A DNA stretch of 64,000 nucleotides, from positions 186,001 to 250,000 of the forward strand of contig NW_026862271.1 in NCBI RefSeq assembly GCF_026571515.1, read 5' to 3'. This DNA comes from Ruditapes philippinarum. Lineage: Eukaryota. How positions within the stretch are numbered: the first letter of the stretch is position 1; every line of letters starts with the position of its first letter. Shown piece by piece: positions 1 to 53,133 of the stretch. Below the pieces are notes generated by a model that ran no database searches, had not been told where the DNA came from, and saw only the letters and a program-made list of their open reading frames with translations. Position numbers and translations under genes: made by a program.

Positions 1-237
1 GTACATTACAGATAAAGCTTACAAGGAATTCTAGGTACATATAAATTACGAAGTCAATCATGTCAAGATTTCATTTTTTTTCTGTCAAAATTTGTTTTGA
101 AAAGCACTATACATAAAGGGCCTACAATTTAGTTTTTTATTATCAGATGCTTACCAATATAACTTAAACAGTACGTTCTTACCTTCAATGTTTGAGATAA
201 AAGAAAATAGTATGTACAATTTGTTTTATAATTGTAG

Positions 238-6345: not shown

Positions 6346-6397
6346 GACAAACATTCATACACCTATAACCATTGGATGGTAAATAATAATAAATGCG

Positions 6398-15124: not shown

Positions 15125-17579
15125 ATGCCAGGTATGTGAATTTACAACATTTTTTCTGTATTTTGTTTATACGATCGATTTTTTATGAACATGTTAGTTT
15201 CTTTTCAAGGTTGCATAATATAGTGTTTATCTTTTATTTAGGTCAACAAACAAGAACAAACATATGATCTTAATCTATTAAAGTAAATATAAGAACTGTT
15301 TTCGGAAGACTTTCAGAATAATTATAAATAATTATGTAAATTGTCACTTGATGAAAATAACGTTCAATAAATAAAATATTAATAAAGGTACTATTTTAGC
15401 ATGAACAATTAGAGTCAACCAAAACAAAATATGTTAACATTAAAACAAGCTTCATGACGAGTTGAATATTGTTTAAGATAAATTTAAAACAAACTAATAC
15501 GTTCAGACCTCTAAAAGAGTAAACAATGGCTTTTTTGTCTGACATTTTACCTAACGTAAGTCGGCCTCCATATTGTATTCTAAATCAATAGATATTGAAC
15601 TTTTTCGTGTTGCTTGTTATCATTCAATATAACTTATCAGTGATTTTACAAAATCAGTTTTTGCCTTTTTTTCTACATCCTATTTTGTTTTTCTAATAGG
15701 TGTACATTTATAACTTTAAATGAGATGTATTATGACCGGATTTAAAAGAGGAAGTATAGAACGAGGTTGTTACGTTAAGCGTGAAATTATCATATCATGT
15801 TTTTGTATGTTTCAAAAGAGAAGAATGGGAGAATTTTTTTATAATATTGGTCACTTTGTAAATTGTTGAGAAGTATGAATTCAAAGATGTCTCTCTTACA
15901 AGTGTTAGACATAGAGTTAAAATTTCCAACTGCCAAATTGATAAAAATATAAAAAAAAATCTAATAAATTACCCAGTATATATAAGTTACATATTTGATA
16001 TAAGACGTACGTAACCTTAATTTGCAAATTAACTTCGTTACTGTAAATGGATCATTCGCCGAAACAGTGCCTCTTTTCTCTTGCTTAAGTCACAACAAAA
16101 GTGTCACAACCAAATCACCCTTTTTTGAAGACACATGTCTATGCTTTTAAAATTTGTTAAATATATTAACAGAATTTAATTGTTGCTGCTTCTTTTATAT
16201 ATTGTACAAAATAAATTAAAACGGTAGATAAACCTTTGAATCTTGGCACACGCCTTTGTCAACTTTTCTCCGACAATTACTGTCAGAGGTATTTGATATT
16301 TATATAACTATCAATGTACCAATTGAACATGAAATAATATAGTATCATACTTATTAAGTTTTTAAATATATAACGACACAAGTTTCTTTCTTTTTTTCTC
16401 TAGATTGTAAACCACTCAGTTCACACAGGCAAAATCCACCTGTGTTTACAAAAACAAATATGTTTGAAATCATACCAGACAAGCACGAACTTGGTACGGG
16501 ATCAGAGGTGACAGTAAAATGTGCTCCAAATCTTAAATTACAAGGCGAATCTTCTTTGAAATGCTTAGCTAATGGAGAATGGAATTATACAAGTATACCG
16601 GTTTGCAAAGGTACATATTATTTTGAAACGACCGTTTCATTTTTGAATGTTTTTTTCAAGGTGTCATTTAGTAATCACTGGTAAAGTAGTAAGGTTTTAT
16701 CACGTTAAAACAAACTTAGCAAATGCCGCCTTAAGATTCTCAAAAGAGTTATAATTATTACAACTAAATGAACATCTTAAACATAACGCTGCAGATTGAC
16801 AATTATCTTAATAATAGAACCAGCTCGTGCACTATTGTTTATATTGAAAGAGTAACCGTGCACTTCCGCATATCATTTCAGAAATAAATACAAATGCTGA
16901 CATCTCATGGACCAATACTCCATGGAAAGTAGTTCTTATCTCTGTTATATGGGGAGTTGCAGCCTTGGTTGTACTTGCATTAGTCATTAAAAGTGTTGCC
17001 ATTTGTATTCGGAAAAGGAGAGAAAATAAAAACAAACAAAGGCATTACACATATGGAGGGTCATATAAACGTCATGGAGATAGACATGTACACAAACATC
17101 ACGAAGATAACGATAGGCATCACACCAATCATACTGGCCAGAATGGTCATCATCAATATAACCAGAGTGATCATCATGATGGATTTCATAGTCATCATGA
17201 GAAACATGGAGGACATAACCATCTGAATAAGAGTCATGATAAAATTCATCACCACAGTCACGATCACGGACATGATCACAGTCATGATCACAGTCATGAT
17301 CAAGGAAATGATCACGGTCACGGTCATGATCACGGTCATGGTCGTGATCACAGTCATTGTCACGGACATGATCACGGTCACAGTCATGGTCACAGCCATG
17401 GTCACGGACATGATAATGATCATGGTCACGGTATTCATAAGAAAACTCATCATAAAGGAAGTCATGGCCATGAGGACCACAAAGATAAACATGTTCACCA
17501 TAGAAGTATATACGATCAAGCGTCTGGCCAGAGTGAAGCACTTTCAGCGTATGATGTACCCATGAAAGATTTGAGATAA
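15125..17579 (+). CDS. Single Sushi/CCP-domain transmembrane protein with His-rich cytoplasmic tail (about 303 aa), intact copy 1
   Basis: Exons 15125-15131 (ATGCCAG/gt, tentative), 16404-16610 (phase 1-1 Sushi exon: C...VTVKC..NLKLQGESSLKCLANGEWNYTSIPVC) and 16882-17579 (hydrophobic VVLISVIWGVAALVVLALVI, then RKRR, then His-rich tail) sum to 912 nt with an open frame. Confidence 0.8.
17248..17432 (+). repeat. Coding hexamer/dodecamer repeat (CATGAT/CACGGT/CACAGT) encoding (HD/HG/HS)n
   Basis: Degenerate tandem CATGATCACGGT-type units read directly. Confidence 0.9.
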
Positions 17580-18962: not shown

Positions 18963-21091
18963 TTACAGGATATTGCATGGCGGTTTCCACCATTTTGCGT
19001 GTTCTGTCTCTTCTTTCTTCTTTAGCAAAGCATCTTCTGAGAAGTAAAGCATTTGCCTTAAAGCAGATGAGGCGAGAATACTTATTTTGTCGTCAAGCTC
19101 GGTCTCATTTTCATAGTTCTTTATTGGAAATACATTGTTACGTGGAAGACCGAGCAGGTCTGCTATCTTCTGAACAGCCTCTTCAACATTTGTGCTTGAA
19201 CAGGCTAAGGAAATATCCTTCTTCACATCTTTACAGAGATTGTCTATTTTTGTTAGAACAACTGTTTGTACTATACCTGTTATAAATATAAAAATGAATA
19301 ATTTAGTAAGTTTATCATGTTATCTCCTATTCGGTGTTTATGTAACGGTTCAGTGTTTTCTGGTTAATCATCCTTTAATGCTTCTATGAAAATGTTGAAA
19401 TAATTCATCACTTAAAAAAAGGAAAAAACAAAAAATGTTTTGATTTGCAAAAAAACTTTTTTTTTTTGGGAAAACAAAGTTTTTAGGAAAAAAAAAATTT
19501 AAAAGGGTTTCAAAAAGAAAAAGCAAAAAGTTAGGTTTTAATAATTTGGTCCTTAACGTAACGTTTTAACCAACCCATAACAAAAAAGCCAAACCCCTTT
19601 CCCCCTTTTTTAGGTTCTGAAAAGGGCTGATTTTTGTTTAAAACCTTTTGATAAAAAAAGTTCCCCTGATGTTTTCAAACAATTTAAAAAACCCCTATGC
19701 AAAGTACTCTAAACATTGGCAGACGGGGGTTTCCGTTAATACCCCAAGAAACTGAATGCTCCCTTGAAAAATAAAAAAAAGAAAAATTAAAAAAATATTT
19801 GAAATTTTTAAAACATTTAAAACAGCAAATTTGCTTTAAAAGGTTTTGTAAAAATATTTTTTGCATATTACTTTTTGTTTTACTTCGTTTTAGTAATGTA
19901 TATTACGGATAGAATAGAAAAATAAGAATTTCCCACAAAAAAAGGCCCAAACGACAAAAAAATTGAAAATGTTGCGGCCGGGGTTTCAATGAGCCTTTGT
20001 TCAAACCCCGGTAACTTTCGAAGTTCAAGTTTCCGCCCCGTCCTATAACCGATTAAGCAGAAATTCAACATTTAAATACAAAATGGTAAAATTTTGAATT
20101 TAAAAATATCCGCAGATGTGTTCATAGGTTATCATGGAACTTTCAATGTTACTCGCTATTGCCATTCAATGAAAAGCGGCATATGGTCCCCAAGTCATAG
20201 AATGCGTGTCCCCCAAACGGGTAAACAATAGGCAGAACTTAATAAAATGGAATTTGAAAGGGGGTCAGAGGTTATGATGACTTCATATCACAGATAAGAC
20301 GTCAAAAGACAAAAGCAAAAGCAGGCAACATTTCCTAAAGATGATTCAACATTATTCAAGTAGGAATATTGGAACCACCCAAATAGAAAATGGCCAAATA
20401 GTTAAAACTTAAATATATTAAAAACACAACAAAAAATGTCGTGCCGAACGATCTATAAGGATCGGACATATAAAAACTCTGATTTAATGTACGGGAAAAC
20501 TTTAACAGCCTCCACACGGCAAAAAAAAACAAACGCTGATGTGGCGATAAAATAGAGAAAATAACAGAAATCCTACAGAGAGTCCAAAACGACAAAATTG
20601 AAAATGTTGCAGGCTCGGTTTGATTGAGTCTGTTCATGGACAGTACTGTTACGTGCAAACTACCGTCCATGCCTTTACACCGGCTTAAGCAAATTAAACA
20701 TTTAGGTATGAAATGGTAAAATTTTGAATTTAGAAATATCCGCAGACGTGTTTATACGGCGGTTATCATGGGGCCGTCAATGCGACATGTTAGTGCCATT
20801 CCATGAAAAGCGGCATATGGTCCCGAGGTAATAGAAAGCAAGTGCCCTAAACGAGTAAACAATGTGCGGAACTAAATAAAATGGAATTTTGAATGAGTAT
20901 TCTATAATCTTATAACATGTTTTTTGACAATTGCAAAGAAGCAATACCTCGTAGTGGTCTTTTATGTGTCCATCCAATAAATATTTGCAGTCATCATGAT
21001 GAAGACCATTGAGTTCTCCATTCCGCGTGTGTCACATAAACAGAAGTTCATGTCTGTACAACTTTGATCTTTTACAGCGTAGGTGGTATAA
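18963..21091 (-). pseudogene. IFI44L: IFI44-like GTPase copy A (5'-deleted pseudogene)
   Basis: The last exon 19276-18963 is intact (TKID, PIKNY, ...PCNIL*). The exon at about 19770-19600 is garbled. The DTRG exon at about 21091-20949 has a frameshift and an AG>AT acceptor change. The first three coding exons and the promoter are absent. Confidence 0.8.
19925..20895 (+). repeat. Two copies of a dispersed ~330-bp repeat in an IFI44-like intron
   Basis: The block TGAAAATGTTGCAGGCTCGGTTT...CACCGGCTTAAGC...GGCGGAACTAAATAAAATGG recurs at 50220-50530 and 50826-51150, inverted at 55070-55460, and as fragments near 2735, 35700, 55830, 56600 and 58780. Confidence 0.75.
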
Positions 21092-21382
21092 TTAAATAAT
21101 GAAGATACTTGTAACATTATTTCCGGGATTCCATTTAAGAAACACATGCGATTTAGCTAAGAGTCTAGATTCAGTATGTTATCAAATTTTTTTTTTCATT
21201 CAGTTTAACATATTTAATTTAAGTTGGAATCCCAAAGTACTGGCTTGGAAATTCCAGCAGAATACGTTATTGAGGTTACTATATCTAGGTCAAGTTTTTC
21301 TAAATTTAAACCGTTAGTCATGTTAATAACCTCTTCATTTGTACGTAAAAATTAAACTTTGTTTTTTTATCATAAATCTGCT

Positions 21383-24300
21383 ATTTATTGGCGACGCCGG
21401 TAAGCGGCGTCGTCTCTTATGGAATGCTTTTTATTTTGGCCTATGGAAGGAGCTGTTATTATTAGCAGTTAATGACATGGTGTGTTAATTAGTCTTATTT
21501 TGATTCGTAAAAATCAAGTAAACAAATATGTTGTTATATTTGTATTTAATAACTTTATGTAAAAAGCATGTGTTATCGTGATATTATTTTCACGAAATTG
21601 CAGGTTAAGTTTAAACAGCTTGTCCCTTATTTTATTGGCAATACTAAAAACCCGGATTTCGAATATCGTTGTGGTCTACATTGATGCGCGTATCCTTCAT
21701 TTATATATTTTCAAAATTTTCCTACAAGAAGAAAGTTCACCTGCAAATGAAGTATAAGAATAGGTAATGGAACTGTTGTAAACGATTATCTTTTGATTTT
21801 ATCCTTATTACGTTTATCTGTTGCGCAGAATGGTTGTTTTTTACAAAGTGTACCAGTATCCGGATGTTGAAAGCTATCCGATTTTCTGCAATTACTGCTG
21901 TCACATGGCCATCTATTTTTAAAAGAATACTGTACCATTAATTTGCATGGCTTAATAAAACTGAGCCTGCAAACATTTCATAATTTTGCTGTTTTAGGGT
22001 GGTTCTGTTGGGTTTCAGGGTTTTTCCTATTTTAAGGGGGAAGTAAAATTTCATTGTTTACCTAAATTATGTTTGTTTCTTTCTATAATGTTTTTACATT
22101 TAGGTTTGATTACTTGTACTTAACTTTTCAATAATGATATTTTTTTTGTAAAATTTTACCAAGTTGTAAGGTCATCAAAAGCATTGTTAATGTTAATTTA
22201 GATTTCATATTTATTTAATAGAAACTGGGAATTTATCAATGTTATTGCATACAGATATCTTAGTATATTTATATTGATGAGACTTATTACATGTTAATGA
22301 TTTCTGAATTTTTAAAGAGACAGTTATGTTCATTGTGATTAAAAGGGATTGAGGACCTTTTCATTCAAAGTTATAAATGTAGTCACCGAGTACTTGATTT
22401 GAAAATGTCCTTAAACTTGGATCAAGGCAAAATAAATTTTATAAAAGTCTAAAAAATCCATTTCAAATAGTTTCTTCTATTTTTTTTTTTCTAACATGTG
22501 TTTATAGTTTTGAAAAAGGAAGTTATTGTCTTATTATTTTAATGGAGGAAACAGAGGTCCTCAACCTCCAGGTCTCCTGATCAACCCCGACAACAGACAT
22601 TACATAGCGTGGGTTGTTATTACCCTTGAATAAAATTTGTTGCACTTAAATTAAATGCGGGTGATTTTTGTGCCCATGAAGACCCAACATGAGTACAAAA
22701 GTAAACACGGCGCCAGATTGAACGAAAAAATGAAAATACAACTCTACCACAAATGGTTCGTTTGTTGGCATTTTCAATGTTTTGTGCGCCCGGATTGCCC
22801 CCTTGATGCAAAATACAAATTCAGCCTTCATAAAAAAATTTCTTATCATAAAAAAAAGGTTAGTTTTTTATCTGTACAAAAAAAGATTATTGTACATGTT
22901 ATTAGCACAGTTATTTGGGCACTTTCAAATTGACCCTGTTATAAAATAATGGCACCAGCCAATAACTGTCTAAGCCCTTTTTAGTAAAATTAATCATCAA
23001 TAATAATATAAATTGTTATTTTAAATAAGACTATGAGTATGTTTAAAATTTTTTTTCTTATTTTATTAAGTTTAAGAATTAATTATCTGTTAATTTAAAA
23101 ATCTAAAAGTTCTGTCACGGTTTAGAACTGTTCACTATTTAGGGGAAGAAAAATGTGTAAGCCCGGCCAGATTAGCTTAAATGCAACTACAGCTGCGGTT
23201 ACATTATTCTGTGGGTCAACAGTTCGAGTTTTGGTCAAGCCTCAAAGTATTTCTTTCATCCTGTGGATGCATATAAGGCAGTGAGTTCAATTCACTATTG
23301 CTCTGTAACATAAGCAAAGTCAAGGACACAAATCAATATAGTGGGGAAATATATGTTGTGGTTTTAGAACTGGTTTCATTAAATTAAAGAGAAAATGGTG
23401 TAGGCCGGCCCGGATAGCTCAGTTTGGTCTTCTTAAAGTCATGGGTTTCGAGTCATGGTCAGGGCAGTTTTTGCAGTCAGGGTTTTAAGAAGTGGTTTTT
23501 CAACTGACAAATGTTTTGATTCATGTAACAGATTTGCATTTAAATTTGAAATGGACAAAGGCAGTATTGCAATGATACTTTTTAGATCTTCAAAGGGCAT
23601 GTTTCAATACAGTTTGATCCCTAAAACTGCACATGAAGAAAGTTCTTTTTTTTTTCTTTTCATTGTAAACTTCAAGCATCCGCCATATTGTACAGACATT
23701 CTTTACATGGGGGTTTAATTCTTATCTCTGAATTAACAGCAGCTGGTGGATGTGGGCTGGGGTCCTCTTCTACACTGCCCTGAAGTACCTATAGTGTACC
23801 CAACGGATGTTCATTTTGGTTCCTCTTTTATGTTTATTATTATGTCAATGGACATGTCTGCGACCCCCTAAGCAAATAAGCTTTTTATTATATGCACAGG
23901 CACGAGATCAGACCTGGGAAGAAAAAATATTGACCAGATTGAAATAAAAAAACCGTGTTTCATCCCTTAAAAAGTGTCAAAACAAAATAAAAATTGCCCT
24001 TTAAAAAACGTTAAAAATGTTTTTTAAAGGAATGGACCCCTTGGGGGGGGGAGGAAAAAATGAAGGAATTAGGGGGGGGGGGGGGTGGGGGTGGGGAAAT
24101 GGTGGGGTGGAGGGGGGGAGGGGGGGGGGAGGTGACAGATGTTGGGAGGGTTAAGGGGGGGGGGGGAGAGGAGGTGAGGGGTGTGGGGTGGGGGAGGGAG
24201 GGGGAGCAGGGAGGGTTGACGAGGGTGTGGGGGGGTGGGGGGGGGGGGGGGGGGGAAGGGCGGGTGGTGGGTGTTGGGGGGGGAGGGGGGGGGGGGGGGG

Positions 24301-24464
24301 GGGGGGGGGTAGGGGGGAGGGGGGAGGGTCAAATAATGTAATAGGTTACTGTTAATAAAGTACACATTTTTTTAAGGTTATTGATAAGGTGCAACAGCTA
24401 GGAATCTAAAGTTCTTTTTGGCGTTCCGCCCCTTTGATGCTGTTGCATCAATGCTTTTCTTGTT
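21383..24464 (-). mobile_element. About 3.1-kb non-autonomous Helentron/HINE (pearl-type) insertion
   Basis: Absent from the paralogous site near 33220. One end is AACAAG plus hairpin TTGATGC-tgtt-GCATCAA (24434-24451); the other has the GC-rich hairpin GGCGACGCCG-gtaag-CGGCGTCGTC (21390-21414) beside a T/A run. Confidence 0.6.
24041..24329 (+). repeat. Poly-G low-complexity tract
   Basis: Nearly pure G runs flanked by homopolymer-garbled sequence; possibly a sequencing artefact. Confidence 0.8.
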
Positions 24465-29603: not shown

Positions 29604-32128
29604 TTACAGGATATTGCATGGCCATTTTGCATGTTCTGCCTCTTCTTTCTTCTTTTGCAAAGCATCTTCTGTGAAGTGAAGCATTTGCCTTAAAGCAGAT
29701 AAGGCGAGAATACTTATTTTGTCGTCAAGCTCGGTCTCATTTTCGTAGTTCTTCATCGGGAATACATTGTTACGTGGAAGACGTAGCAGGTCTGCTACCT
29801 TTTGAACAGCTGTTTCAACAACCGGGCTTGTAACGGCTGACGAAATATCCCTTTTCACATCTTTACACAGAGTATCAATCTTTGTAAGAACAACTGTCTG
29901 TACTATACCTGTTATAAATATTAATATGAATAATTAAGTTATTTAGTTAATTAATTTATCTCCTTTTAGATTTTTACCTAAAGGTTCAGTGTAAAGTTAA
30001 GAATTTCTATCAAATCATTCTTCTTTAATGTTTCTATGAAAATGATCAAATAATTCATTAATAAATCTACAAAAGAAAATATGTGTATGATTTGCAAATA
30101 TTTTTTTCCTACTTCAAGTACAACATATAAAAAGCTACAAAACAGAAATAAGCAACGTGTTATGAGTATGTGAATTTCATCATTAACGTTAAGTTATGTC
30201 CATCGATAACAAAACAGCCCACCTCTCTCTTTTGCAAGTTCCTGAAATGTTCTGATTTTGTGTAAATCTTCTTTTGATAGAACGTCCACAGATGTTGCAT
30301 CAATGACAAACGCTATGCAATGTACTCTATCATTGGCAGACGGCTTTATTTTAAAGTTCCACCAAGATACTGGAAGCTTCGATGAAAACTAGATAAAAGT
30401 ACATAATAGGCATAATTAAAAGTTATCGAAATGCCAATAAAAAATAAACAGCAGTTCGCTTGATGAAGGTAATAAGAAATATTTTTCTACTACACACTTA
30501 AATGTAATCTCGTTTATTTACGTGAATAGTATATACGATTATTTTATAATATTATAACTTCTTTATTGACATTCACAAAAATCAATACCTCGTAGTGGTC
30601 TTTGATTTGTCCATCCAATAAATATTTGTAGTCCATCTGATGCAGACAATATTTCTTTTCCATTCCACGTGTGTCACATAAACAGAAGCTCATGTCTGTT
30701 CCACTTTGATCTTTAAAAGTGTAGGTGGTGTACTTAAATGATGAAGATTCTTTTTAATATCTTATTTGAAACTTTAGTGATTTGATTCACGCTTTTGCGT
30801 TTTCTTGATATATATTAAGGAGTTTAATTTTGTAGTTAGATTTATTTTGGCAGATAAAATTGCTTTTATAATAACAATAGAGAAGCCTGCATAGACAAGA
30901 ATTATGACATTTGAAATTCAAAATTCTTATGCTATACACTATATGCATAACAGGTAATCGTCCAATGAAAAATGAAAACATGCGGAAAACAAAATAAAAT
31001 TTTACGTGTTCTTTGAAATTGATTTTACAGTTTCAACAGGTTATTATTAAGAAAACAATTATTTACATTTTTTGTAAGGCTATTTTCTGCGCTACCACAT
31101 GTTGCGCGCTGAGTTATACGATTCCTGAATACGGAGTCAATGGTATTATAGAAGCTGGACTTTCCTGCGCCAACAAGTCCAATCATCAATATTCGTGTCC
31201 GTGTGACTGACGGATCTGATGGTGTAAAGCTCATTATATCGCCTTTTATACCCAGTAGATTCTATATCAAAATCAAGAGAACTAAAAATTGAAAGTTAAA
31301 GTAAAACAATTACAAAAATCAAAATTTGGATTTGGCAATTTTGCTTATACCGTTGTTAGAGTTCTCGTCTCTCATGTTGTAAATGATACAATAGAACACA
31401 CATTGAATTCCATGGTTCTGTGTTAACTTTTTTGACAATATTTCTTGCCATTTGATGAAAATTTACAAAAGGGTTTAATTAGCAAATAAGGAACAAAAAG
31501 GTGTTATCTGTCAAAATGATTGAATAATAAGCGCGAAAGTCAATGTATAAATCTTATTTTTTCTAGATCTATTAATGAATATTTTGACATTTTTTCTCTT
31601 TCTGTTTATATTAATCACTAAGATATGATTGCATTTTTACACAACTACGTTTTAAAATGGTAAGAAAAGCATAATCTTGATTATCATGTTCTGTTTCAAA
31701 ATGTACTGTTTTATATACATTATCTAACTATCATAATATATTCGTTTCTTTTATATTTTGTGGTTTCGTAAGCCAGGAATATGTACCTCTCTACTCCAAT
31801 TGGTTGGTCTCCATTGTGTAGGCACTTCACTTATGTGTCTCTGATCACCTAAATGAAATAGATAATTACTTTGTTTAAACATTTTCCTAACGAACGCGAA
31901 TGCTTAATAATGTTTCATGTGATACATGAAAAGGTTTTTAGTTAAAAAGATATTTACACTTTTAACGTGTCAACTATTGAATGCATAAACACAGCTTTAA
32001 ATATCTTATTTTATCATACCAGCATAAATAAAATGTCCATTCATTTGACCATTCGACGGTATAATGACTCCATTGGGCATTGCTTGAACAGGAACTTTGT
32101 GTCCATTATTATTGTAAACAGTCATCAT
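29604..32128 (-). CDS. IFI44L: IFI44/IFI44L-like P-loop GTPase copy B, intact, 326 aa, no TLDc domain, C-terminal CaaX (CNIL)
   Basis: Exons 32128-32020, 31848-31787, 31261-31067, 30732-30589, 30388-30223 and 29908-29604 sum to 981 nt with an open frame. G1 GLVGAGKSS, G3 DTRG, G4 TKID; IFI44-type motifs RILMIG, LLDG, VHCIAFVIDA, PMKNYENE. Confidence 0.9.
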
Positions 32129-34202: not shown

Positions 34203-34389
34203 ACTCACTGTTGGTTCTTTTTATTCCAATCTTACTGTATCAAAAGCAAATATCGCATTATCTATGAAGTAAGTGTTAACGTGTTAAAAGATATTTCACA
34301 ATGTCTTAAATTCCCGTTCAAATTTCCATTGGTAATGAGCCAAGGTATAAATAGTTTCCCAAAGAAATTCCTAAAACGAAACCGAAAGT
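34203..34389 (-). promoter_or_regulatory. Putative promoter and non-coding exon 1 of IFI44-like copy B, with ISRE
   Basis: ISRE GAAACCGAAAGT at 34378-34389; TATA-like TATTTATA on the - strand at 34353-34346; GTGAGT splice donor on the - strand at 34208-34203. All three are conserved in the copy C paralogue. Confidence 0.7.
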
Positions 34390-37098: not shown

Positions 37099-40000
37099 AA
37101 TTTGAAGACGATAATAGCAAATATTAGAGTCCCTGCCAAATAAGCTGCTAAATATCCGAAGTTGTTTGCAATATCATCCACAGCACCGGGTAATATTTGT
37201 TTAGGTAATAATTTCCACTTTCAATACAATTCAACGTCACTGAAATGTATAAAATATGTTTGGTACTATAAATTCATAATACTATGTAGTTCATATAAAA
37301 TAGAAATACATAAGGTAAGATAAATATTAATTCAAGTTATACTGATATTATTAATGCGATTTGATATTCTAATACTTTGCATGGGATGACTAAAAGATTT
37401 TCATACTTTTTTACAGGAAGAAATTAGTAAAAAACACAACACTTATTTTGGTCAGGTATCGGAGCATTTGCAGTCATTTTTTATTGTATGCCAATGTCTT
37501 CAAACTTACCATTCCGATCACAGTCAAAGTCAAGGTCTTTAAACTCGTTTGCTACAAAAATGGCTGCAGAATATCTATGTATTAGTATATAGCTTAACCA
37601 CTCCATTGGTTCAACCAAGGTATCTAATGTTCTGAAAGGAAATATATTTTACAGACGTTGGAAAAATTGTTACACTGAAGTTATACTGGACAAAATGTGA
37701 CATTTATTCATCAAAGAAAACAATAATAATACCCTTTTTAATAAAACCTTACAAACAATCATTGATATCTTATTTTACCTTTACTAACATAGGTCCATAC
37801 AATCCGTCTCGACTCTCGCGCTAGTATAAATCCCGCAAATTGAACCGATTATGTTGTCAATTATAAGTTTAAACGTTGGTGTACATCTTCAAAAATATAC
37901 GAGGCATAACACAAACATCTGGTCTTTGTATATATTTGTATAAATTTTGCCTGCACCTGCGTTTTGTTGAACATTTTGCCTCATCTTCATTCATCCTTAT
38001 CCTCTCGTTCATTCAATTTAATATTTTTTAAAGAAAAAAACCCAAACATTTCAAGAATAAAATGTCATAAAATCAGACAACAAGTCTTTCTTGTTCAAAA
38101 TATATAACAATAAATGTAACGTAGTTCTTGAATGAACACTTATTTTTACTGATTTCTGCATTGATATGTGTAAATGTTTTTTTGCAGGTAAATGATTATA
38201 CGTACAAAGTGCTATGCTGTTAATGATTCCCATGAAGGGAGGGCCTGTGGTAGCGTTATAGATGAGACTAATACGGTCCTGGATACTTGTCTGTGTGCAT
38301 TTTTAACACTTCTCAAGAAAATGATGATAAACACCATAAACAAGGGGAGTAGAAAAATACGAGCAAAGTAGTATTTTCGATCTCTAAAAACGTTAGTATA
38401 CATCCGGCTGAAAAATAAGGATTTGTTCATAAACCGCTCAATTTATTATTATAGACATGTGAAAGCATAGCATATAAATACATTACCAATGACAAAGTAA
38501 CCGTTATGGGTATAAAAGCCTCGTTAGTGAGATTTTTTTAATCTTACAAAGTTTGGAGTGTAAGTCGCTGTCATTTGATATTAATCAAATCTTTTACATC
38601 TGTAAGTGTTTTATTATCAATTTGACTTAATCTGAATAATCAAATCTAAAATGCAAAATAGCAGATCTGAGACATTTCACAAATTACTCTCCATATACAT
38701 GTAGTGACGTGTTTTTATTTGTAAGGTAATATAGAAAACGAACGTTTTAACCAACAATCTCTATTGATTCTATAAAATAATGATTTACCATATAATTGTA
38801 ATAAGCACCCTCATGCAACTTGGTCCGCTACTTGCTACACTACCACTAGCGAGCTTACTGGCATCAGTTCCATTCATTGCATTTCTTATATTGTGGAGAG
38901 TTTGTTGGTTTATTTGTGAGATTTGTAAAGCTTCCACCAAACTATCTACACGTTTCGTACTTTAATATTTTCTATCTTAATCACGACGACCTATGCTCGC
39001 AACATCGAAAGAGAAGGACTTAAGCGTATTTAACTGTATTGGACTGTATTGTTTTGGCGTTTTCTTATAATTTTGTTGTAAACAAGGTAAACTTTAATAA
39101 AAAAATATCCGAATGACACAAGTATGTAATCTTTCAATTGATATAACTATAAACAGATTTGATTTATTTAGTAAACAATTTGCAAAAAGATAATCGAATG
39201 TTAACATGAAGGAATATATATAGATATTGTTTATTACTTTATAAATGTACTTTATTTTGCTTTTTACAGTAACGCATTTTTGATGTTAAATTTATAACGA
39301 TACCAGAATTTCATATTATAAAATAAATGACTTGTCTATACTAAATATAGACTTATATTTACCCGTGATGTGTTTAAAAATATTTACGACATAATTATCC
39401 TATAACTTACTATATCTATCTAAAGGGTTTGTATATGTATCACAAGGATAACCAAGAGCTGTGAAATAAGGAACCATCTTTGGCAGGTCCACAATACACC
39501 ATCTGTCCCTTTGACATGATTCCAATCTGATCAAACATGTGGAAGATATCTGAACTAGGTTGATGGACTTTAAACAGAACAATTTCCCCTTGTTTAGCGA
39601 GATCACGGAGATTTCTGACTAGGTAACGAGCAGTGTTACTGTCCAAACTTGATGTCCAACAAAACCATATCTATATCAAAATCAACAAAAATTCATTTAA
39701 AACAGAGCGAACAGAATTATATCTATATGAGAACCAACCTAAACATTTCAATAACTTAATCATCAGCAACGTATCATATTCAGCACTAGGTAAAACTATA
39801 TCTACAATAGAACAAAACACAACAACAACAAAATATTTTCAAAACAAAAACAAGCAAGTCTTAAGTTAGCAGAACAATTAAACTATTTTTATAACATAAC
39901 CATTTCTAAGAAATTTACTGCTTCAAAAGATTTGAAATTGTGATATACAAGTACCATGATGTTTAATTGGAGTTATCAATCTCAATTACCTGGATATTTA

Positions 40001-41049
40001 AGTAACTGAATTGCTATGGTAACTCGTCTTTGCTCTCCCCCTGAGATTCCACGGATAATACTACTTCTTATCCTTGAGTCAGCAACATCTTTTAAACCCA
40101 TTTGTTGTATTACTTTAGCTACCTTTAATTTTTTATTACAATTTTGAAATAAACTACATTGATAAAGATGTATCAAATATACTTCTAAACGATATAAATG
40201 TATTCTTGATACATGTAACAACCTCATGAAGACATCCATTTTAGTTATCACATATAAATATTCAATTTGAACATCAAATTCCTTATTCGTTCCCGGTCCT
40301 ACATTCAAACGCTAAGATACATCATTAGAAAATCTACACAGATATTTGAGCAAATTACATTACACTACTTTTATTTCACATAATTTAATATTTGTTGAAA
40401 AAGGTTGCTTTGCTTCCGCAAAGCAGTTATTTTACTACTTTATAAAAGAAAATTACCTTCCGTTCAATATCATCTGTTGTTACATGTGCTGGTAATTTCA
40501 ACTTTGCAGTGTATCTTAACGTTTCTCTAACAGTAGAGTTAGGTAACAGCCTGCATGACGTACGTAGCATATTGCTGGATGACGTCCCGAGTACATTTAA
40601 AGATCCTGTTTGTTTTGTGATTGATATTGTTACTGTGTGTATACCACACTTGCAAAAAATTATATATGTATATAATTATGCAAATAAAACAATTTTCAAA
40701 CATCGAAGAATATGTTAAATGTGTACTGCAAATATTTGTGCACATTATATTTAATCATTAAATTACATGCATTCATTTCTTATCCGAAAATTTGACTTAG
40801 AATTTATAGAAAATAAATTTCTAATTACCTCCCTTTATTTACATGAAATGTTAAATTGGGCAATATCTTTATAAATAATGCTTATTGAAACTTACAATAT
40901 TGACAAATCTTAATTTGAGCATCATATTTATGAAATAAAACCATGAAAAAATTGTGTTACAGGATCTTTAACGTTGTTAAGATATACCTGTCCACTGACA
41001 TCTCCCGTTGACCGACTAGATATTACATCAAGCATTGAGGTTCTGAATC
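37074..41049 (-). pseudogene. ABCG5: ABCG5-like half transporter, copy 1 (pseudogene, 5'-truncated)
   Basis: Exon remnants: degenerate Walker A end (GFRTSMLDVIS), YVMQ..LLPN.TVRETL, signature ISGGEQRRVTIAIQLL, Walker B with deletion, HQPSSDIF, GYPC..YTNPLD, IQDRI.LIY, ESRDGLY, ANEF. Multiple frameshifts, a MITE inside an exon and missing exons. Confidence 0.85.
40601..40967. mobile_element. 367-bp MITE, Kolobok-like (TTAA TSD, AG...CT termini)
   Basis: TIR AGATCCTGT/ACAGGATCT; TTAA at 40597-40600 and 40968-40971. Removing the element and one TTAA restores the ABCG5 frame YLNNVKCTRDVIQQY. Confidence 0.75.
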
Positions 41050-41149: not shown

Positions 41150-43326
41150 CAATAACTTTAATTAAAAAAAGCAACCATAACGAACAATTAGAGTCCATCA
41201 AGTAAAAGATGTGTGTCAATTTTTAAAACAAGTTGCATGACAAGTTCAATATTGTTTACAAAATACACAATCTAAAAATGTAAACAGTGGCTTCTTTGTC
41301 TGACATTTTATCTAACATAAGTCAGCCTCTGGTTATCTATTTTAAATTGATATATCTTAAACTTTATCGTGTTGTCTTATCCTTCAATATAACTTATCAG
41401 CATATGAATATGGATCTAGCAAAATATTTTTTTGCCTTTTTTTTCTAATATTATATTCTGTTTTTCAAATTTATGTACATATAAAACGATAAAAGGCAAC
41501 TTAAATGAGACGTTTTATGACCGGATATAAAAGAGGAAGTATAGAATAACAAATAATTTTTATACGTTTTTTTTGTATTTAGCAAAAGAGAAGTAGAGTT
41601 TTATTGATGGATAGGAGAAATTTGTTTTCTAATATGGGTCACAATTACAATTTGTTAAACATTTGTTGCTGCTTCTATTTGATATTTATATAATTATAAA
41701 TGTATCTATTGAATAGAAAGTAACAAAATAACATACCTATTAAGCTTTTGAATATATAACATGTATAAGGACACCACTTACCTTTTTTGTTCTAGATTGT
41801 AAACCACTCAGTTCACACAGACAAATTCCACCTGTGTTTACAAAAGCAACTGTGATAATTTCTGCCAAGTTATCTTAGCAAGAGGGCCATGATGGCCCTG
41901 AAATCGCTCACCTGTATATAGGCCCCTGGGCAAAGGCCTATTTTAAACCAGGGGCTTTTATTTGAACGAAACTGGTAGACACCCATTAGAAGATGTTTCA
42001 TGATAAATATCTAAGCTCTTACTCTTATAAGTTTTATAAGAATATTTTTAATGTTTTGACTATATACATATAGGGAAAAACAATGACCCTCACGGAGGGG
42101 CGAATTTTGACCGCAGGGCTTTTATGTGAACAAACATTGTAGACACTCACTTAAAGATTTTCATGCTTAGTATCTAAACTCTAGCTCTTAGGGTTTTTAA
42201 AAAAAAAACAATTTAAGTTTTTACTATACACATATAAGCAAAATCAATAACGCCCGGGGCGGGGCCAATTTTTACCCAAGGACCCTTATTTGAACAAACT
42301 TGGCAGACACCCATTAGAAGATGTTTTACGATAAATATCTTAGCTCTAACTCTTTGGGGTTTTTAAAAAGAACATTTTTTAAAGTTTTTACCATATACAT
42401 AAAGGGAAAAATAATGACCCCTTGGGACGGGGCCAATTTTTACCCCAGGGCTTTTATTTGAACAATCTTGGTAGACACTGACTAGATAATGTTTCATGCC
42501 AAATATTTAAGCTCTAGCTCTTTTTGTTTTCTAAAAGAAGATATTAAGTGTTTTCTTTGAACAATATTTAAAGTTGACTACCAAAGAAACATTCATGTGA
42601 AGTTTGGATGAAATTAGCTTAGCGGTTTATGAGGAGATGTCGTTTTAAGTAAAAGTTAGACTTTTTATTATGAAATGAAGAGCTTTAAACATTTGACTTT
42701 TAAGTGTGACCTTGACCTTGGGATAACAACCCAATTTTCGCCCTCTGCACATCGTCTCATTATGGTGATTACTTCTGCCAATTTATTTTTTTAAAAATTT
42801 CAGTAGTTTAAATGTAATAGAGCGGTAACAAAATATAGACTTCTATTATGAAATGAAGAGCTTTTAAAATTTGACCTTGACCTTGGGGGTAGCAACCCAA
42901 TTATTTCGCTCTGCACATCGTCTCATTATAGTGAGTACTTGTGCCAATTTATTTCAAAAAATTTTCAGTGGTTTAAAATTTATGGAGCGGACACAAACGT
43001 GTTACGGACGGACAGACGGACAGAAGGACGGACTGACAGACGGATGCCATTCCTATAATCCCCTTTCCGGTATGCAGAAGGGGATGAACAAAGGCATTAC
43101 ACATGTTGAGGGTCATATAAACATCATGGAGACAGACCTGTACACAAACATCATAAGGTAACTATAGACATCACAACAATCAAACTGGTCAAAAAGGCCA
43201 TCATCAAGACCATCACGAAGAGAATGGTCATTATCAATATAATTACAGTGATCATCATGATGGATTTCATAGTCAATATGAGAAACATGCAGGACCTTAA
43301 TACCTTAATAAGAGTCATGATAAAAT
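41150..43326 (+). pseudogene. Sushi-His gene copy 3 (disrupted)
   Basis: 41150-41845 matches intron 1 and the start of the Sushi exon (DCKPLSSHRQIPPVFTK). 43087-43326 matches the start of the His tail with stops. The Sushi core and TM segment are replaced by a transposon; the 3' flank resumes at about 46030. Confidence 0.85.
41850..43088 (+). mobile_element. Pearl/HINE-type composite element(s) with internal satellite arrays
   Basis: 5' hairpin AGGGCCAT-G-ATGGCCCT (41883-41899), four ~165-bp monomers (about 41936-42550), two ~177-bp monomers (about 42660-43000), (ACGG/ACAG)n at 43004-43044 and 3' hairpin ATCCCCTT...AAGGGGAT (43058-43085). Confidence 0.75.
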
Positions 43327-43859
43327 ATGATGAACAAGTTCAACAAGGAAAAGCGGCGTTCAATGAACGCAGCCCCATCCGACCCAGCAACAAGAGTCTG
43401 TGGCAAGGAGCCCAGGAAAAAGTTGAAATCCGAGTCTTCATTAACCCTTTACGCGATATACTCGCCTTTTAACGCCCTTTTTACCACCCTGTTTTGTTGT
43501 CTCAAATGGTAAGAAAATACCTTATTTAGGCCCCAAGACTTGTTTTTGTTTGAGAAATGTTGTTAAAAATGTGACCACCTTTTCGGCGCCGCCCCGAAAC
43601 TAAAAGAACATTTTGGACTTGTGAGAGGCTAAAATGACCCCAGATCCATCATAAGGTAACGTGTAACAAACGCTCAAAAGCATTTGAATCTATCTCAATC
43701 AATTGAGAAGTTGCAGCACTTTCAATTTTGATGGAAAAAAATCAACGCAAAATAGTGATTTTTGGCAATTTTGAGATGTCCCCTCGTTGCCATGGTAACA
43801 GAAAATTTAAGCCTGAGCATGTTGTTGGAAAAGCAATGGTCCAGTCAACATTTGTGCCA

Positions 43860-49265: not shown

Positions 49266-52200
49266 TTAAAGGATATTGCATGGCTGTTTCGACCATTTTG
49301 CGTGTTCTGCTTCTTCTTTCTTCTTTTGCAAAGCATCTTCCGTGAAAAAGAGCATTTGCTTCAAAGCAGCTAAGGCAAGAATACTTATTTTGTCGTCCAG
49401 CTCTGTCTCATTTTCGTAGTTCTTTACTGGGAAGACATTGTTACGTGGAAGACCTAGCAGGTCTGCTACCTTCTGAACAGCCTCTTCAACATTTGTGCTC
49501 GAACAGGCTAACGAAATATCCTTCTTCACATCTTTACAGAGATTATCTATATTTGTTAGAACAACTGTCTGCAATATACCTGTTATAAATATAAAAATGA
49601 ATAATTTACTAAGTTTATCATTTTATCTCCTATTCGGTGTTTATGTAACGGTTAAGTGTTTTCTGGTTAATCATCCTTTAATGTTTCTATGAAAATGTTG
49701 AAATAATTAATCAATTAATAATTAAAAAAGGAAAATACAAGATATGTGTTTGATTTGCAAAATACTTTTTCTTTTGGGTAAATCATTTTTTTCTAATAAG
49801 CAAATTATAAGGTTACAAAACAAAAATAAGCAAAATGTTAGGAGTAAGTAATTTGCAGCATTAACGTTACGTTTTAACCATCGATAACAAAATAGCACAC
49901 CTCTCTCCTTTGCAAGTTTCTGAAATGTTCTGATTTTGTGTAAATCCTTTTCTGATAAAACGTCCACTGATGTTGCATCAATGACAAACGCTATGCAATG
50001 TACTCTATCATTGGCAGACGGTGTTCTGTTAAAATACCACCAAGAAACTGAATGCTCCGTTGAAAACTAAATAAAAAGACAAAATTAAAAGATATCGAAA
50101 TGTTAAAGCATTTTACAAACAACACTTAGTTTGAAAAGGGTAATTACAAATATTATATGCTATATAATTTTGCTATGTTATCTCGTTGATTTTGTATATG
50201 ATAGAATAAAAAAAATTAGATTCCCCACAGAAAGTCCAAAACGACAAAATTGAAAATGTTGCAGGCTCGGTTTCATGAGCCTGTTCATTGACGGTGCTGT
50301 CGCGTTCCTAGAACCGGCTTAAGCAGAATTCATCATTTAAATACGAAATGGTTAAATTTTGAATTAAGAAATATCCACAGATGTGTTCATATGGCGGTTA
50401 TCATGGAACCGTCAATGTGAGTGGCTTATACCATTCCATGGAAAGTGGCGAATGGTCCCCAATTTATAGAACGCGTGTGCCCTAAACGAGTAAACAATAG
50501 GCGGAACTTAATAAAATTGAATTTTGAAAGGGGATCAGAGGTTATGAAGACTGCACATCACAGATAAGACGTCAAAAAACAAAGTTAAAAAACATGCAAC
50601 AAACCTAAGGATAATTCAACATTATTCAAGTAGGAATATTGGAACAACCCAAATAGAAAATGGCCAAATAGTTAAAACTTAAATATATTATAAACACAAC
50701 AAAAATGTCTTGCTGAAAAATCTATAAGGATCAGACATCTCTGATTGAATGTACGGCGCAACTTTTAACAACCTCCACAAGACAAAAACAACGTTGATGT
50801 GGCGATAAAATAGAGACAATAAGATTCCCTACAGAAAGTCCAATACGACAAAATTGAAAATGTTGCAGGCTCGGTTTGATTGAGCCTGTTCATGGACGAT
50901 ACTGTCACGTGCAAACTACCGTCCATGCCCCTAGCACCGGCTTAAGCAGAATTCAACATTTTAGTATGCAATGGTAAAATTTTGAATTTAGAAATATCCG
51001 CAGATTTGTTTATACGGCGGTTATTATAGGCCTTTAATGTGACACGTTAGTGCCATTCCATGAAAAGCGGCATATGGTCCCCAAGTAATAGAAAGCTTGT
51101 GCCCTAATCGAGTAAACAATGGGCGGAACTAAATAAAATGGATTTTTGAAAGAGCATTCTATAATCTTATAACACGTATTTTCCCAATTACAAGGTAGCA
51201 ATACCTCGTAGTGGTCTTTAATGTATCCATCCAATAAGTATTATAGAAGCTGGACTTTCCCGCGCCAACAAGTCCAATCATCAATATCCGTGTTCGCGTG
51301 ACTAACGGATCTTCTTTTGGTGTAAACCTCATTAAATCGTCTTTTATACACTATAGATGCTATTACAAAATCAAGAGAAATATAATTTTGAAAGTTATGA
51401 CAATTACAAAAATCAACATTTGGCAATTTTGATTATACCGTTGTTAGAGTTCTAAACGTACATACTGTAAATGTTAAGAAGAACATTGAATTACAAGATT
51501 CTGTGTTCACATTTTGACATGTCTTGTCTCTCTCTTTCAAGGTTTGATGAAACTTCACATAGCGTTTGATTAACAAATAAGGTACATAAAGGTGTTATCC
51601 GTCAAAATGTTTGAAAAATAAGCGCGAAAGTAAATGCATCAATTTCAAATTTTCTAGATCTATGAATGAATGTTTTGACAAGTTTTCTCTTTCTGTAAGT
51701 ATTGATCATTACGACATGCTTGCATTTTTCCGTTACCACGTTTTAAAATGGTTAGAAAAGCATAAGCTTCATTATTAGTTTCCCTTTTTAAAATGCGTTG
51801 TTGTGTCGCCTTGTCCGGGCCATTTCTCCTAAACTATTAAAAGCTATGGACTTGAAACTTCATATGATGATTGATCTCATTAAGAAGAATTGCAGTTCAC
51901 AAAACCGGTACATTTTTGAGTTAATGTCCTTTGTAAATTTTCCTACTTTGTCTTGGCCATTTTTCCTAAACTTTAAAAGCTATGGATTTGCAACTTCATA
52001 GGATGATAGATCACAACAAGAAAAAGAGCAGTGCACAAGAACCGGTACTCTGCACGTATGTTTTTGAGTAATTGCCCTTTGTTAATTTTCATCATTTATA
52101 TTTGTCCGGACCACTTCTCCTAAACTATAAAAGCTATGGACTTGAAAATTCATAGGATGAGAGATCTCATTAAGAAAAAGTGCAGTGCACAAAAACTGAT

Positions 52201-53044
52201 ACTCTGCGCTTCTTAATTTTTGAGTTGTTGCTCTTTGATAATTATAATACTTTATTTTTGTACCGGCCATTTCACCTAAACAATAAAAGCTATGGACTTG
52301 AAAATCCATAGGATGAGAGATCTCACTGAGAAGAAGAGCAGTGCATATATAAGAACCGGCATTATGTACTTCATGATTTAAGAATTATTGCCCTTTGTTA
52401 ATTAATATACTTTATTTTTGTCCGGGTCAATTCTCCAACACAAAAAGCTATTCAATCTACATCAATCCTGATGTAACAGTGTTACAATCAGTTTAAATGC
52501 TTCTAAAGTTCAGGTCCATGTATATTGTAAGAATGGTATTTATATTTAACCTATATTTAAGAAGAAAATGCCGATGTGACAGCTTTACTGTTTTTTTTTC
52601 GCAAGGCGACACATCCGACTCGCAGAGTTCTAGTTTGATATACATTATCTAATAAAAACAAACTATTCTATTTTTGATATATTGCGGTTTTTAAGCAAAA
52701 TGTATGTACTTCTCTACTCCATTTGGTTGGCCTCCATTGTTTCGGCATTTCACGAATGCATATCTGATCACCTAAATGAAACAGAGGACTACTTTTAAAA
52801 ACACATTGTTAATTGGCACGATTGCTTTATGATGTTTAATGTGATACACGAAAAGTTTAGTTTACGAAATTATTGACATTTTTACTTGTCAGCTACGGAA
52901 TGCATAAACACCTATTTAAGTGTCTAATTGTATCATACCAGCATAAATAACATGTCCATTCATTTGTCCATTCGATGGTATAAAGACGCCATTGGGCATT
53001 GATTGAACAGGAACACAGTCCCCATCATTTTTGTACGAGGTCAT
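49266..53044 (-). pseudogene. IFI44L: IFI44-like GTPase copy C (pseudogene)
   Basis: Exons 53044-52939, 52771-52710, fused 51359-51205, 50066-49901 and 49579-49266. In-frame TAG at 51353-51351; a deletion joins the G1 exon to the end of the G3 exon out of frame; G4 reads TNID; ends ...PCNIL*. Confidence 0.88.
51799..52635 (-). mobile_element. HINE/pearl-type element with ~155-bp internal tandem monomers
   Basis: Absent from the copy B intron (about 31720). Subterminal inverted repeat TGTGTCGCCTTG (51802-51813) / CAAGGCGACACA (52602-52613); 4-5 monomers containing AAAGCTATGGACTTGAAA. Confidence 0.75.
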
Positions 53045-53133
53045 CACCTTTGTTTTTTATCCTGAAAAAGAAAATAAATGAAGGAAATCATGCTTAGTGA
53101 TTAAGTTAGGTGTTTTAATCATATTCTGTAGAT

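What the first reader, a model, noticed from the sequence alone, without database searches (positions are those of the whole stretch)
29604..29621. IFI44-like GTPase ends in a CaaX prenylation box (CNIL), kept in all three paralogues
Seen: C-termini are KWPCNIL* (B), KWWKPPCNIL* (A, 18963) and KWSKQPCNIL* (C, 49266). The box is invariant while the preceding residues vary by indel and substitution, and Lys/Trp residues lie just upstream. Known: CaaL is the geranylgeranyltransferase-I signal; interferon-induced GBP1/2/5 use CaaX to coat pathogen membranes. As I recall, human GBP2 ends in CNIL and human IFI44/IFI44L have no CaaX. Inference: a convergent membrane-targeted, GBP-like IFI44 effector, and the best candidate for an undescribed system here.
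Basis: partly seen in the sequence, partly recalled or inferred. Interest (0 to 1): 0.85.

Follow-up and report, generated by a model that had tools for sequence, protein, structure and literature searches.

The report
Lipid-anchor tail on clam IFI44-like GTPase
A Manila clam immune-type GTPase of the IFI44 family ends in CNIL, the same four-residue lipid-attachment signal as human GBP2. A second clam genus keeps an equivalent signal, so this poorly understood antiviral family probably has membrane-anchored members nobody has described.

Summary
On the minus strand, three last exons end in PCNIL plus a stop, at window 29604, 18963 and 49266.

The window comes from Ruditapes philippinarum. Copy B is RefSeq XP_060558200.1, "interferon-induced protein 44-like", 326 aa. 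Only B is intact in the window. Copies A and C are pseudogenes, and a fourth intact copy, D, lies 2.5 kb past the window end.

Conservation among the paralogues says little:
- 78% of last-exon residues are invariant among the four copies.
- The 3' flanks are 79-93% identical.

The real support comes from other species. The sister protein in Mercenaria mercenaria, which still has its TLDc domain, ends in CRII. An unnamed fragment ends in CIIL. The linker before the Cys varies from 1 to 11 residues, yet the Cys always sits at position -4.

A second, unrelated venerid clade starts with MG and ends in CIVS, CILS, CSVS or CIMF. No other protein among the 395 family members sampled has a canonical CaaX box, including about 100 vertebrate ones.

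CNIL is a proven GGTase-I signal in human GBP2. The fold is Toc34/GIMAP/mitofusin-like, not GBP-like.

Verdict: a new variant of a known kind, of moderate interest.

The parts
29607..29618 (-). CaaX box C-N-I-L of gene B (Cys323 codon at 29616-29618). It is followed by the TAA stop at 29604-29606.
   Evidence: Identical to the C-terminus of RefSeq XP_060558200.1 (P0001).
29604..29908 (-). Gene B exon 6, the last exon, phase 1, with its acceptor AG at 29909-29910. It encodes the G4 motif TKID, the long C-terminal helix and the tail AKWPCNIL.
   Evidence: The AF2 model has a helix at 288-319 followed by a floppy tail at 320-326.
30223..30388 (-). Gene B exon 5.
   Evidence: GT-AG borders.
30589..30732 (-). 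Gene B exon 4 (48 codons, G3 motif DTRG). It is skipped in isoform X2 (P0156, 278 aa).
31067..31261 (-). Gene B exon 3, with the P-loop GLVGAGKS.
   Evidence: The invariant columns are G85, G90, K91 and S92.
31787..31848 (-). Gene B exon 2.
32020..32128 (-). Gene B exon 1, the coding start MMTVYNNNG. From residue 25 on (exons 1-2) the protein aligns with the last strands of the TLDc domain of the Mercenaria orthologue, so the N-terminus is a TLDc stump.
18963..19276 (-). Copy A last exon, open frame ending KWWKPPCNIL plus stop. It belongs to a pseudogene.
19577..21110 (-). Copy A remnants. Exon 5 is degenerate (69% identity, 23 gaps). Exon 4 has lost its acceptor and carries a frameshift that runs into a stop. 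Exons 1-3 are deleted.
49266..49579 (-). Copy C last exon, open frame ending KWSKQPCNIL plus stop. It belongs to a pseudogene.
49893..53047 (-). Copy C upstream exons. Exons 5, 2 and 1 are recognisable. Exon 3 has a TAG at 51351-51353. A deletion fuses exon 3 to the end of exon 4 at about 51238-51242, out of frame.
34373..34387 (-).
   Evidence: earlier finding s1-793124.

Best explanation
Gene B (window 29604-32128, minus strand; RefSeq XP_060558200.1 of Ruditapes philippinarum) encodes a 326-aa IFI44-like GTPase. It has lost the N-terminal TLDc domain but keeps every conserved nucleotide-binding motif. Its C-terminus is a working CaaX box.

Inferred steps, none shown here:
1. Geranylgeranyltransferase-I attaches a C20 lipid to Cys323.
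2. An Rce1-type protease removes -NIL.
3. ICMT methylates the new C-terminus.
4. The lipid, helped by the nearby Trp and Lys residues, holds the GTPase on cellular membranes.

The signal was inherited, not invented in this window. It was already present in the common ancestor with the Mercenaria orthologue, which still carries TLDc. Copies A and C are decaying duplicates that merely still carry the box. What the anchored GTPase does on the membrane is unknown. The family context suggests an antiviral or antimicrobial role, which is untested.
For: - The motif is real and terminal, and two annotated isoforms use it.
- All introns of gene B have GT-AG borders.
- G1 GLVGAGKS, G3 DTRG and G4 TKID fall on invariant or near-invariant family columns.
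- B versus D gives dN/dS of 0.42 overall and 0.25 in the last exon, so both are under purifying selection.
- The Mercenaria protein P0158 ends ...ARWKLPECRII. It is sister to the Ruditapes CNIL pair, with SH-aLRT 99 and 98.5 after removing the tail columns.
- Fragment P0101 ends ...KSQCIIL. In the aligned tails the linker between the conserved Trp and the Cys is 1 to 11 residues long, yet the Cys is always at -4 and the a2 residue is always Ile.
- An unrelated clade of about 295-aa IFI44-like proteins in Ruditapes, Mercenaria and unnamed transcriptomes ends in C[ISA][VLM][SF] in all nine members seen.
- Only 2 of the other 378 sampled family proteins have a Cys at -4, and both are non-canonical: CDFE and CEKK.
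- CNIL itself is labelled from mevalonate and targets GFP to membranes in a GGTI-sensitive way (PMC2998424).
- The AF2 model (pLDDT 90) puts AKWPCNIL after the last helix at lower confidence, meaning it is exposed.
- The genome encodes ICMT and several prenyltransferase beta-subunit genes.
Against:
- Use of this last exon rests on RefSeq models only.
- The predicted helix ends only 4 residues before the Cys in B. Pro is at -1 and Trp at -2, whereas known substrates favour a small or hydrophilic flexible linker of up to 11 residues (PMC1175975).
- The X residue of the Mercenaria box is Ile, a less typical GGTase-I signal.
- The Ruditapes clade looks to be in flux. TLDc is lost, 2 of 4 copies are dead, and the branch leading to the pair is long (0.56).
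- Paralogue conservation alone is at chance level.
Confidence: 0.65

Rival explanations
1. Neutral relic. The terminal Cys-x-I-L is carried along by descent in a young, decaying gene cluster and has no present function. The protein stays cytosolic.
For: - Two of the four copies are pseudogenes, yet they keep the box.
- 78% of last-exon residues are invariant, and the 3' flanks are 79-93% identical, so within-genome conservation is uninformative.
- TLDc is lost and dN/dS is fairly high at 0.42.
Against: - The Cys stays at -4 across three lineages although the linker length varies from 1 to 11 residues and the box residues change (NIL, RII, IIL).
- The clade is well supported without the tail columns.
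- An independent clade keeps a CaaX in all nine members.
- The rest of the family has highly variable tails with no CaaX.
Confidence: 0.15
2. The terminal Cys serves another purpose: S-palmitoylation, a disulfide or metal contact, or a C-terminal recognition or degradation motif. Alternatively it is farnesylated rather than geranylgeranylated, or it is prenylated but not cleaved.
For: - Boxes ending in Leu can also be farnesylated (PMC1175975).
- The Mercenaria box ends in Ile.
- The short linker with Trp and Pro is atypical.
Against: - The position exactly four residues from the end is what is conserved, and that is the hallmark of CaaX processing.
- The CNIL tetrapeptide is a verified, GGTI-sensitive prenylation signal.
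Confidence: 0.12
3. Annotation artefact. Real transcripts splice to another 3' exon or end earlier, so CNIL is never translated.
For: The RefSeq proteins are computed models.
Against: - Both annotated isoforms share this exon.
- The exon has a clean acceptor.
- Its frame continues the conserved G4 motif and C-terminal helix found in all family members, which also end 10-30 residues after the same helix.
Confidence: 0.06

Closest known systems
Vertebrate and molluscan IFI44 / IFI44L (TLDc + GTPase interferon-stimulated proteins)
   Same: The GTPase module and C-terminal helix are homologous. B is 48-55% identical to TLDc-bearing Mercenaria and Dreissena IFI44-like proteins. The Mercenaria orthologue's GTPase region is about 42% identical to fish IFI44-like proteins, with E about 1e-54. 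The P-loop, DxxG and TKxD columns are shared.
   Different: B and D have no TLDc domain, only a stump of it. They carry a C-terminal CaaX, which no other sampled family member has outside two venerid clades.
Human GBP2 (also GBP1 and GBP5): CaaX-prenylated interferon-induced GTPases
   Same: The terminal tetrapeptide CNIL is identical to that of GBP2, which is prenylated and membrane-targeting (PMC2998424). Both are GTPases from immune-induced families.
   Different: The GTPase class is unrelated. B has no GBP domains and its fold is nearest Toc34/GIMAP/mitofusin. It is 326 aa against about 590 aa. Any likeness is convergent and limited to the anchor.
GIMAP / Toc34 / mitofusin group of membrane-anchored GTPases
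   Same: These are the best structural matches: Toc34 Z 16.0 (rmsd 3.8, 207 aligned), mitofusin-2 Z 15.6, GIMAP7 Z 14.0 and top of the Foldseek list. Like them, it is a G domain followed by a C-terminal helix and a membrane anchor. From established knowledge, those proteins use transmembrane or hydrophobic tails.
   Different: Sequence identity is only 10-17%. Pfam AIG1 is not matched and Septin is around its threshold. The anchor here is a lipid, not a helix, although some IFI44-like relatives do end in a hydrophobic helix.
Second venerid IFI44-like clade (Ruditapes P0289 and P0291, Mercenaria P0290, P0292 and P0293)
   Same: These proteins are also TLDc-less IFI44-like GTPases ending in a CaaX box.
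   Different: They sit far away in the tree. Their box is farnesyl-type (CIVS, CILS, CSVS, CIMF). Six of the seven full-length members shown begin with Met-Gly, a myristoylation-type start.

Membership tests
IFI44 / IFI44L family | GTPase module homologous to IFI44, with conserved P-loop, DxxG and TKxD motifs | tested here: met
   Searches give hits to hundreds of named IFI44-like proteins, vertebrate ones included. The invariant columns are G85, G90, K91, S92 and D237.
IFI44 / IFI44L family | N-terminal TLDc domain (PF07534) | tested here: not met
   One search finds no TLDc in P0001 or P0157, whereas Mercenaria P0158 has TLDc at 5-173. Only a stump aligns, B residues 25-40. No TLDc-coding sequence was found in the window.
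IFI44 / IFI44L family | Induction by interferon-type or antiviral signalling | tested here: inconclusive
   An ISRE-like element lies at 34373-34387. Other clam IFI44-like genes respond to poly(I:C) (PMC7430831), but this gene was not identified there.
CaaX prenylation substrates (GGTase-I type) | Cys exactly four residues from the C-terminus, aliphatic a2, X = Leu | tested here: met
   C-N-I-L plus stop at 29604-29618.
CaaX prenylation substrates (GGTase-I type) | The tetrapeptide is accepted by a prenyltransferase | not testable with these tools
   By literature only. CNIL of human GBP2 is mevalonate-labelled, and GFP-CNIL is membrane-bound and GGTI-sensitive (PMC2998424). The clam enzyme was not tested.
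CaaX prenylation substrates (GGTase-I type) | Flexible, small or hydrophilic linker of up to about 11 residues before the Cys | tested here: inconclusive
   The stretch is hydrophilic (KKKEEAEHAK), but AF2 keeps it helical up to -4, and Trp and Pro occupy -2 and -1 (rule from PMC1175975). PrePS could not be run.
CaaX prenylation substrates (GGTase-I type) | Conservation of the motif in orthologues | tested here: met
   Mercenaria has CRII and fragment P0101 has CIIL. The clade has support 98.5-99.
CaaX prenylation substrates (GGTase-I type) | The processing machinery is present in the organism | tested here: met
   ICMT (PF04140) scores 64.5 bits. The prenyltransferase beta repeat (PF00432) matches at several loci.
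CaaX prenylation substrates (GGTase-I type) | Lipid actually attached; Cys-dependent membrane binding | not testable with these tools
   Needs labelling and fractionation experiments.
Guanylate-binding proteins (GBP) | Dynamin-like large GTPase domain plus C-terminal helical domain | tested here: not met
   No GBP Pfam family was hit. No GBP appears among the top structural matches, which are Toc34, mitofusin, GIMAP7 and Era.
GIMAP/AIG1-Toc-septin group | Sequence-profile membership (AIG1 or Septin) and fold | tested here: inconclusive
   The Septin profile scores 23.6 bits for B (cut-off 26.2) and 29.8 for D. AIG1 is not significant. Fold Z is 14-16, but many TRAFAC GTPases are tied.

The most novel reading that the evidence does not exclude
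Bivalve IFI44-like GTPases have repeatedly gained membrane anchors: a geranylgeranyl-type CaaL box in one venerid orthogroup, an N-terminal Met-Gly plus a farnesyl-type CaaX in another, and hydrophobic tail helices elsewhere. Together these would form an invertebrate set of membrane-targeted, infection-induced GTPases that act on pathogen or organelle membranes. They would play the role that GBPs, IRGs and GIMAPs play in vertebrates, and would give the first mechanistic handle on what the IFI44 GTPase module does.
Probability: 0.25. Interest if true: 0.75.

Novelty: new variant of a known kind. Interest (0 to 1): 0.55.

Why it matters
IFI44 and IFI44L are among the most strongly induced antiviral genes, yet their biochemical mode of action is still unclear. 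In vertebrates nothing is known to tie them to membranes.

This work finds natural family members with a conserved prenylation box, and a second clade with a myristoylation-type start plus a farnesylation-type box. That gives a simple, testable hypothesis: the GTPase module works at a membrane. It also provides ready-made wild-type and Cys-mutant pairs to test it.

The finding also shows how an expanded invertebrate immune gene family of at least 108 last exons in this genome diversifies its localisation signals. The same CNIL solution has been reached independently by GBP2.

The claim rests on sequence only, and the gene is already annotated, so this is a lead rather than a discovery.

Tried and rejected
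The source species of the unnamed Logan/ENA proteins (P0101, P0093, P0123, P0288) and the neighbouring gene calls could therefore not be obtained.
- Pfam on single exons gave only weak P-loop hits.
- 'Conserved in three paralogues' as evidence of selection was rejected after finding that A and C are pseudogenes and that chance invariance has p of about 0.37.
- 'Member of the GBP family' was rejected.
- A single origin for all CaaX-bearing IFI44-like proteins was rejected, because the two clades are far apart in the tree.
- The 'careful' tree did not finish in time. The quick tree with SH-aLRT support was used instead.
Exons were searched by reference. The full-length protein used was the database entry P0001 returned. 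dN/dS was summed exon by exon.
- Literature searches for IFI44 together with prenylation or CaaX terms found only co-mentions that concern GBPs or CDC42.
- PrePS and other prenylation predictors are not available here.
- Human IFI44 and IFI44L tails were not looked up.

Full report
**1. What is in the sequence**

The finding's coordinates are correct. On the minus strand, window 29604-29621 reads Pro-Cys-Asn-Ile-Leu-stop. The two other sites read ...KWWKPPCNIL (stop 18963-18965) and ...KWSKQPCNIL (stop 49266-49268). The window has no N runs and about 31% G+C.

**2. Whose gene it is**

I searched 1.84 billion protein representatives with the last exon alone, given by reference. This returned a 326-aa protein identical over the exon. 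That protein is RefSeq XP_060558200.1, "interferon-induced protein 44-like isoform X1", of the Manila clam Ruditapes philippinarum. A second isoform, X2 (278 aa), skips one exon and ends the same way.

Mapping the protein back gives six exons for copy B, all with GT-AG borders:
- exon 1: 32020-32128
- exon 2: 31787-31848
- exon 3: 31067-31261
- exon 4: 30589-30732
- exon 5: 30223-30388
- exon 6: 29604-29908

I built no joined model of my own. The full-length sequence used later is the database entry.

**3. The three copies are not equal**

- Copy A has lost exons 1-3 by deletion and has lost its exon-4 acceptor. It also has a frameshift that runs into a stop, and its exon 5 is degenerate.
- Copy C has a TAG at the third codon of exon 3 (51351-51353). 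It also has a deletion that fuses exon 3 to the end of exon 4, out of frame.
- Only B is intact in the window.
- A fourth copy, D (RefSeq, 329 aa...EIWLKQPCNIL), lies 2.5 kb beyond the window end and is intact.

My exon-by-exon comparison agrees.

**4. Is the box conserved more than chance would give?**

Among the paralogues, no. 78 of 100 alignable last-exon residues are invariant among the four copies. Four chosen columns would therefore all be invariant with probability about 0.37. The untranslated 150 nt after the stop are 79-93% identical. The one synonymous difference in the box (CTG versus CTT) and the in-frame 9-nt indel are suggestive only. B versus D gives dN/dS of 0.42 overall and 0.25 in the last exon, so the two intact genes are under purifying selection.

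Across species, yes. The closest protein outside Ruditapes is a 475-aa Mercenaria mercenaria IFI44-like protein (P0158) that still has its TLDc domain. It ends ...ARWKLPECRII. In a tree of 94 family members it is sister to the Ruditapes CNIL pair, with SH-aLRT 99. The clade survives removal of all tail columns, with support 98.5. An unnamed 75-aa fragment (P0101) ends ...KAAKSQCIIL.

In the aligned tails a conserved A-[KRH]-W is followed by a linker of 1, 4, 4 or 11 residues. Then comes Cys-x-Ile-[Leu/Ile] and the stop. What is conserved is the position of the Cys relative to the end, and that is what CaaX processing requires.

**5. How rare it is in the family**

The clam genome holds at least 108 matches to this last exon. 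I recovered 99 tails. Six have a Cys at -4: the four CNIL copies plus two on other contigs ending CIVS and CILS.

Among 395 family proteins collected from four searches, 19 have a Cys at -4:
- 17 fall into two clades.
- The other two are non-canonical (CDFE, CEKK) and fit chance.
- About 100 vertebrate IFI44-like proteins (fish, axolotl, lizard) have no CaaX.

The second clade contains about 295-aa proteins without TLDc, from Ruditapes, Mercenaria and unnamed transcriptome assemblies. All end in CIVS, CILS, CSVS, CAVS or CIMF, and six of the seven full-length members shown begin with Met-Gly. It sits far from the CNIL clade in the tree, so the box arose at least twice. That fits this second clade.

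**6. What the protein looks like**

Pfam finds no TLDc in B or D, and only sub-threshold or marginal Septin and MMR_HSR1 hits. B residues 25-40 align with the last strands of the Mercenaria TLDc domain, so they are a stump of it. The P-loop (GLVGAGKS), DTRG and TKID motifs fall on invariant or near-invariant family columns.

An AlphaFold2 model built on a 67-sequence alignment has mean pLDDT 90.3. It shows a G domain and a long last helix (288-319), followed by a seven-residue tail, AKWPCNIL, at lower confidence.

Structure matches are as follows:
- Foldseek's best matches are GIMAP7, GIMAP2 and septins.
- A second alignment pass puts Toc34/Toc33 at Z 15-16, mitofusins at Z 14-16 and GIMAP7 at Z 14, with many other TRAFAC GTPases close behind.
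- No GBP appears among the top matches.

**7. Mechanism**

Shown here:
- A canonical CaaL box sits at the annotated C-terminus.
- The box is conserved in the orthogroup.
- The predicted tail is exposed.
- ICMT and prenyltransferase beta-subunit genes are present in the genome.

Shown by others: CNIL of human GBP2 incorporates mevalonate label. Fused to GFP, it gives Golgi and membrane localisation that a GGTase-I inhibitor abolishes (PMC2998424).

Inferred: the clam protein is geranylgeranylated on Cys323, trimmed and methylated, and thereby held on membranes, with Trp321 and the Lys run assisting.

Caveats:
- The linker before the Cys is short in B and holds Trp and Pro. Known substrates favour small or hydrophilic residues over up to 11 positions (PMC1175975).
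- The Mercenaria box ends in Ile.

Any role on pathogen membranes is speculation. An ISRE-like element lies upstream, and other clam IFI44-like genes respond to poly(I:C) (PMC7430831). This particular gene's expression was not examined.

**8. What could not be done**

The main remaining doubt, whether transcripts really end in this exon and how they are regulated, is therefore open.

**9. Comparison and novelty**

- The protein is a member of the IFI44 GTPase lineage by sequence, but it fails the TLDc criterion.
- It is not a GBP. The resemblance is a convergent anchor.
- Its fold neighbours (Toc34, GIMAPs, mitofusins) are, from established knowledge, membrane-anchored by C-terminal hydrophobic segments.
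- About a dozen IFI44-like relatives end in such a segment. Some of these may be gene-model read-through.
- No paper in the searchable library connects IFI44 with a CaaX box or prenylation.

I rate it a new variant of a known kind. The gene is annotated and the chemistry is textbook. A conserved lipid-anchor signal in this family appears undescribed, and it gives a direct experimental handle.

**10. Verdict**

- Observation: confirmed.
- Confidence that the box is a functional prenylation signal: about 0.65.
- Interest: 0.55.

Noticed in passing
G000:C10614:197349-197612 (L038), G000:C9333:205646-205900 (L040); proteins P0289-P0293, P0123, P0288: A second, unrelated clade of TLDc-less IFI44-like GTPases (about 295 aa) in Ruditapes and Mercenaria. 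Six of the seven full-length members shown start with Met-Gly (for example MGNSQST, MGQSSSK), and all end in a farnesyl-type CaaX (CIVS, CILS, CSVS, CIMF). They are candidate doubly lipidated proteins.
   Followed up: partly
G000:C10758:252547-258000 (L109; about 66547-72000 in window numbering): A fourth, intact CNIL paralogue (D, RefSeq 329 aa, P0157) lies just beyond the window end. It is closer to pseudogene C than to B.
   Followed up: yes
window 32020-32128 and 31787-31848 (-): From residue 25 on, the N-terminus of gene B aligns with the end of the TLDc domain of the Mercenaria orthologue (NGQMNGHFIYAGDQ against NGNMNATELEVYKVTDDQ). The short N-terminus is a TLDc stump, not a new sequence.
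   Followed up: partly
proteins P0002, P0052, P0062/P0155, P0073, P0146, P0234, P0360: About a dozen IFI44-like proteins from unionids, a pearl oyster and a mackerel end in a hydrophobic, transmembrane-like tail. This looks like another route to membrane anchoring in the family. Some may be gene-model read-through.
   Followed up: partly
window 19577-19781: The exon-5 remnant of copy A is full of homopolymer runs (GGGG, TTTTT, AAAAAA) and indels relative to B, C and D. It looks as much like a low-quality assembly patch as like real decay.
   Followed up: no
window 201-3069 and 6383-9281 (+): Two tandem cytochrome P450 genes (CYP2-like exon translations such as FxxGxHTTT and PERF motifs) lie upstream of the IFI44-like cluster.
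   Followed up: no
window 16358-17576 (+), with echoes at 43110-43469: An open frame holds a Sushi-like exon, followed by a transmembrane segment and a His/Asp-rich tail. It is repeated in decayed form near 43 kb and is part of the same triplicated module (earlier notes s1-793128 and s1-793168).
   Followed up: no
window 39985-40675 (-) and 61004-62345 (-): ABCG-type transporter exon fragments (for example ISGGEQRRVTIAIQLL) occur after copies B and C, consistent with a repeated three-gene module.
   Followed up: no
window 24014-24371: A strongly strand-skewed stretch (GC skew 0.33) whose two strands translate as poly-Pro and poly-Gly low-complexity open frames. It is probably a simple repeat, not a gene.
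   Followed up: no
window 34373-34387 (-): ISRE-like TTTCGGTTTCGTTTT lies about 2.2 kb upstream of the start codon of gene B, near the presumed non-coding first exon.
   Followed up: partly
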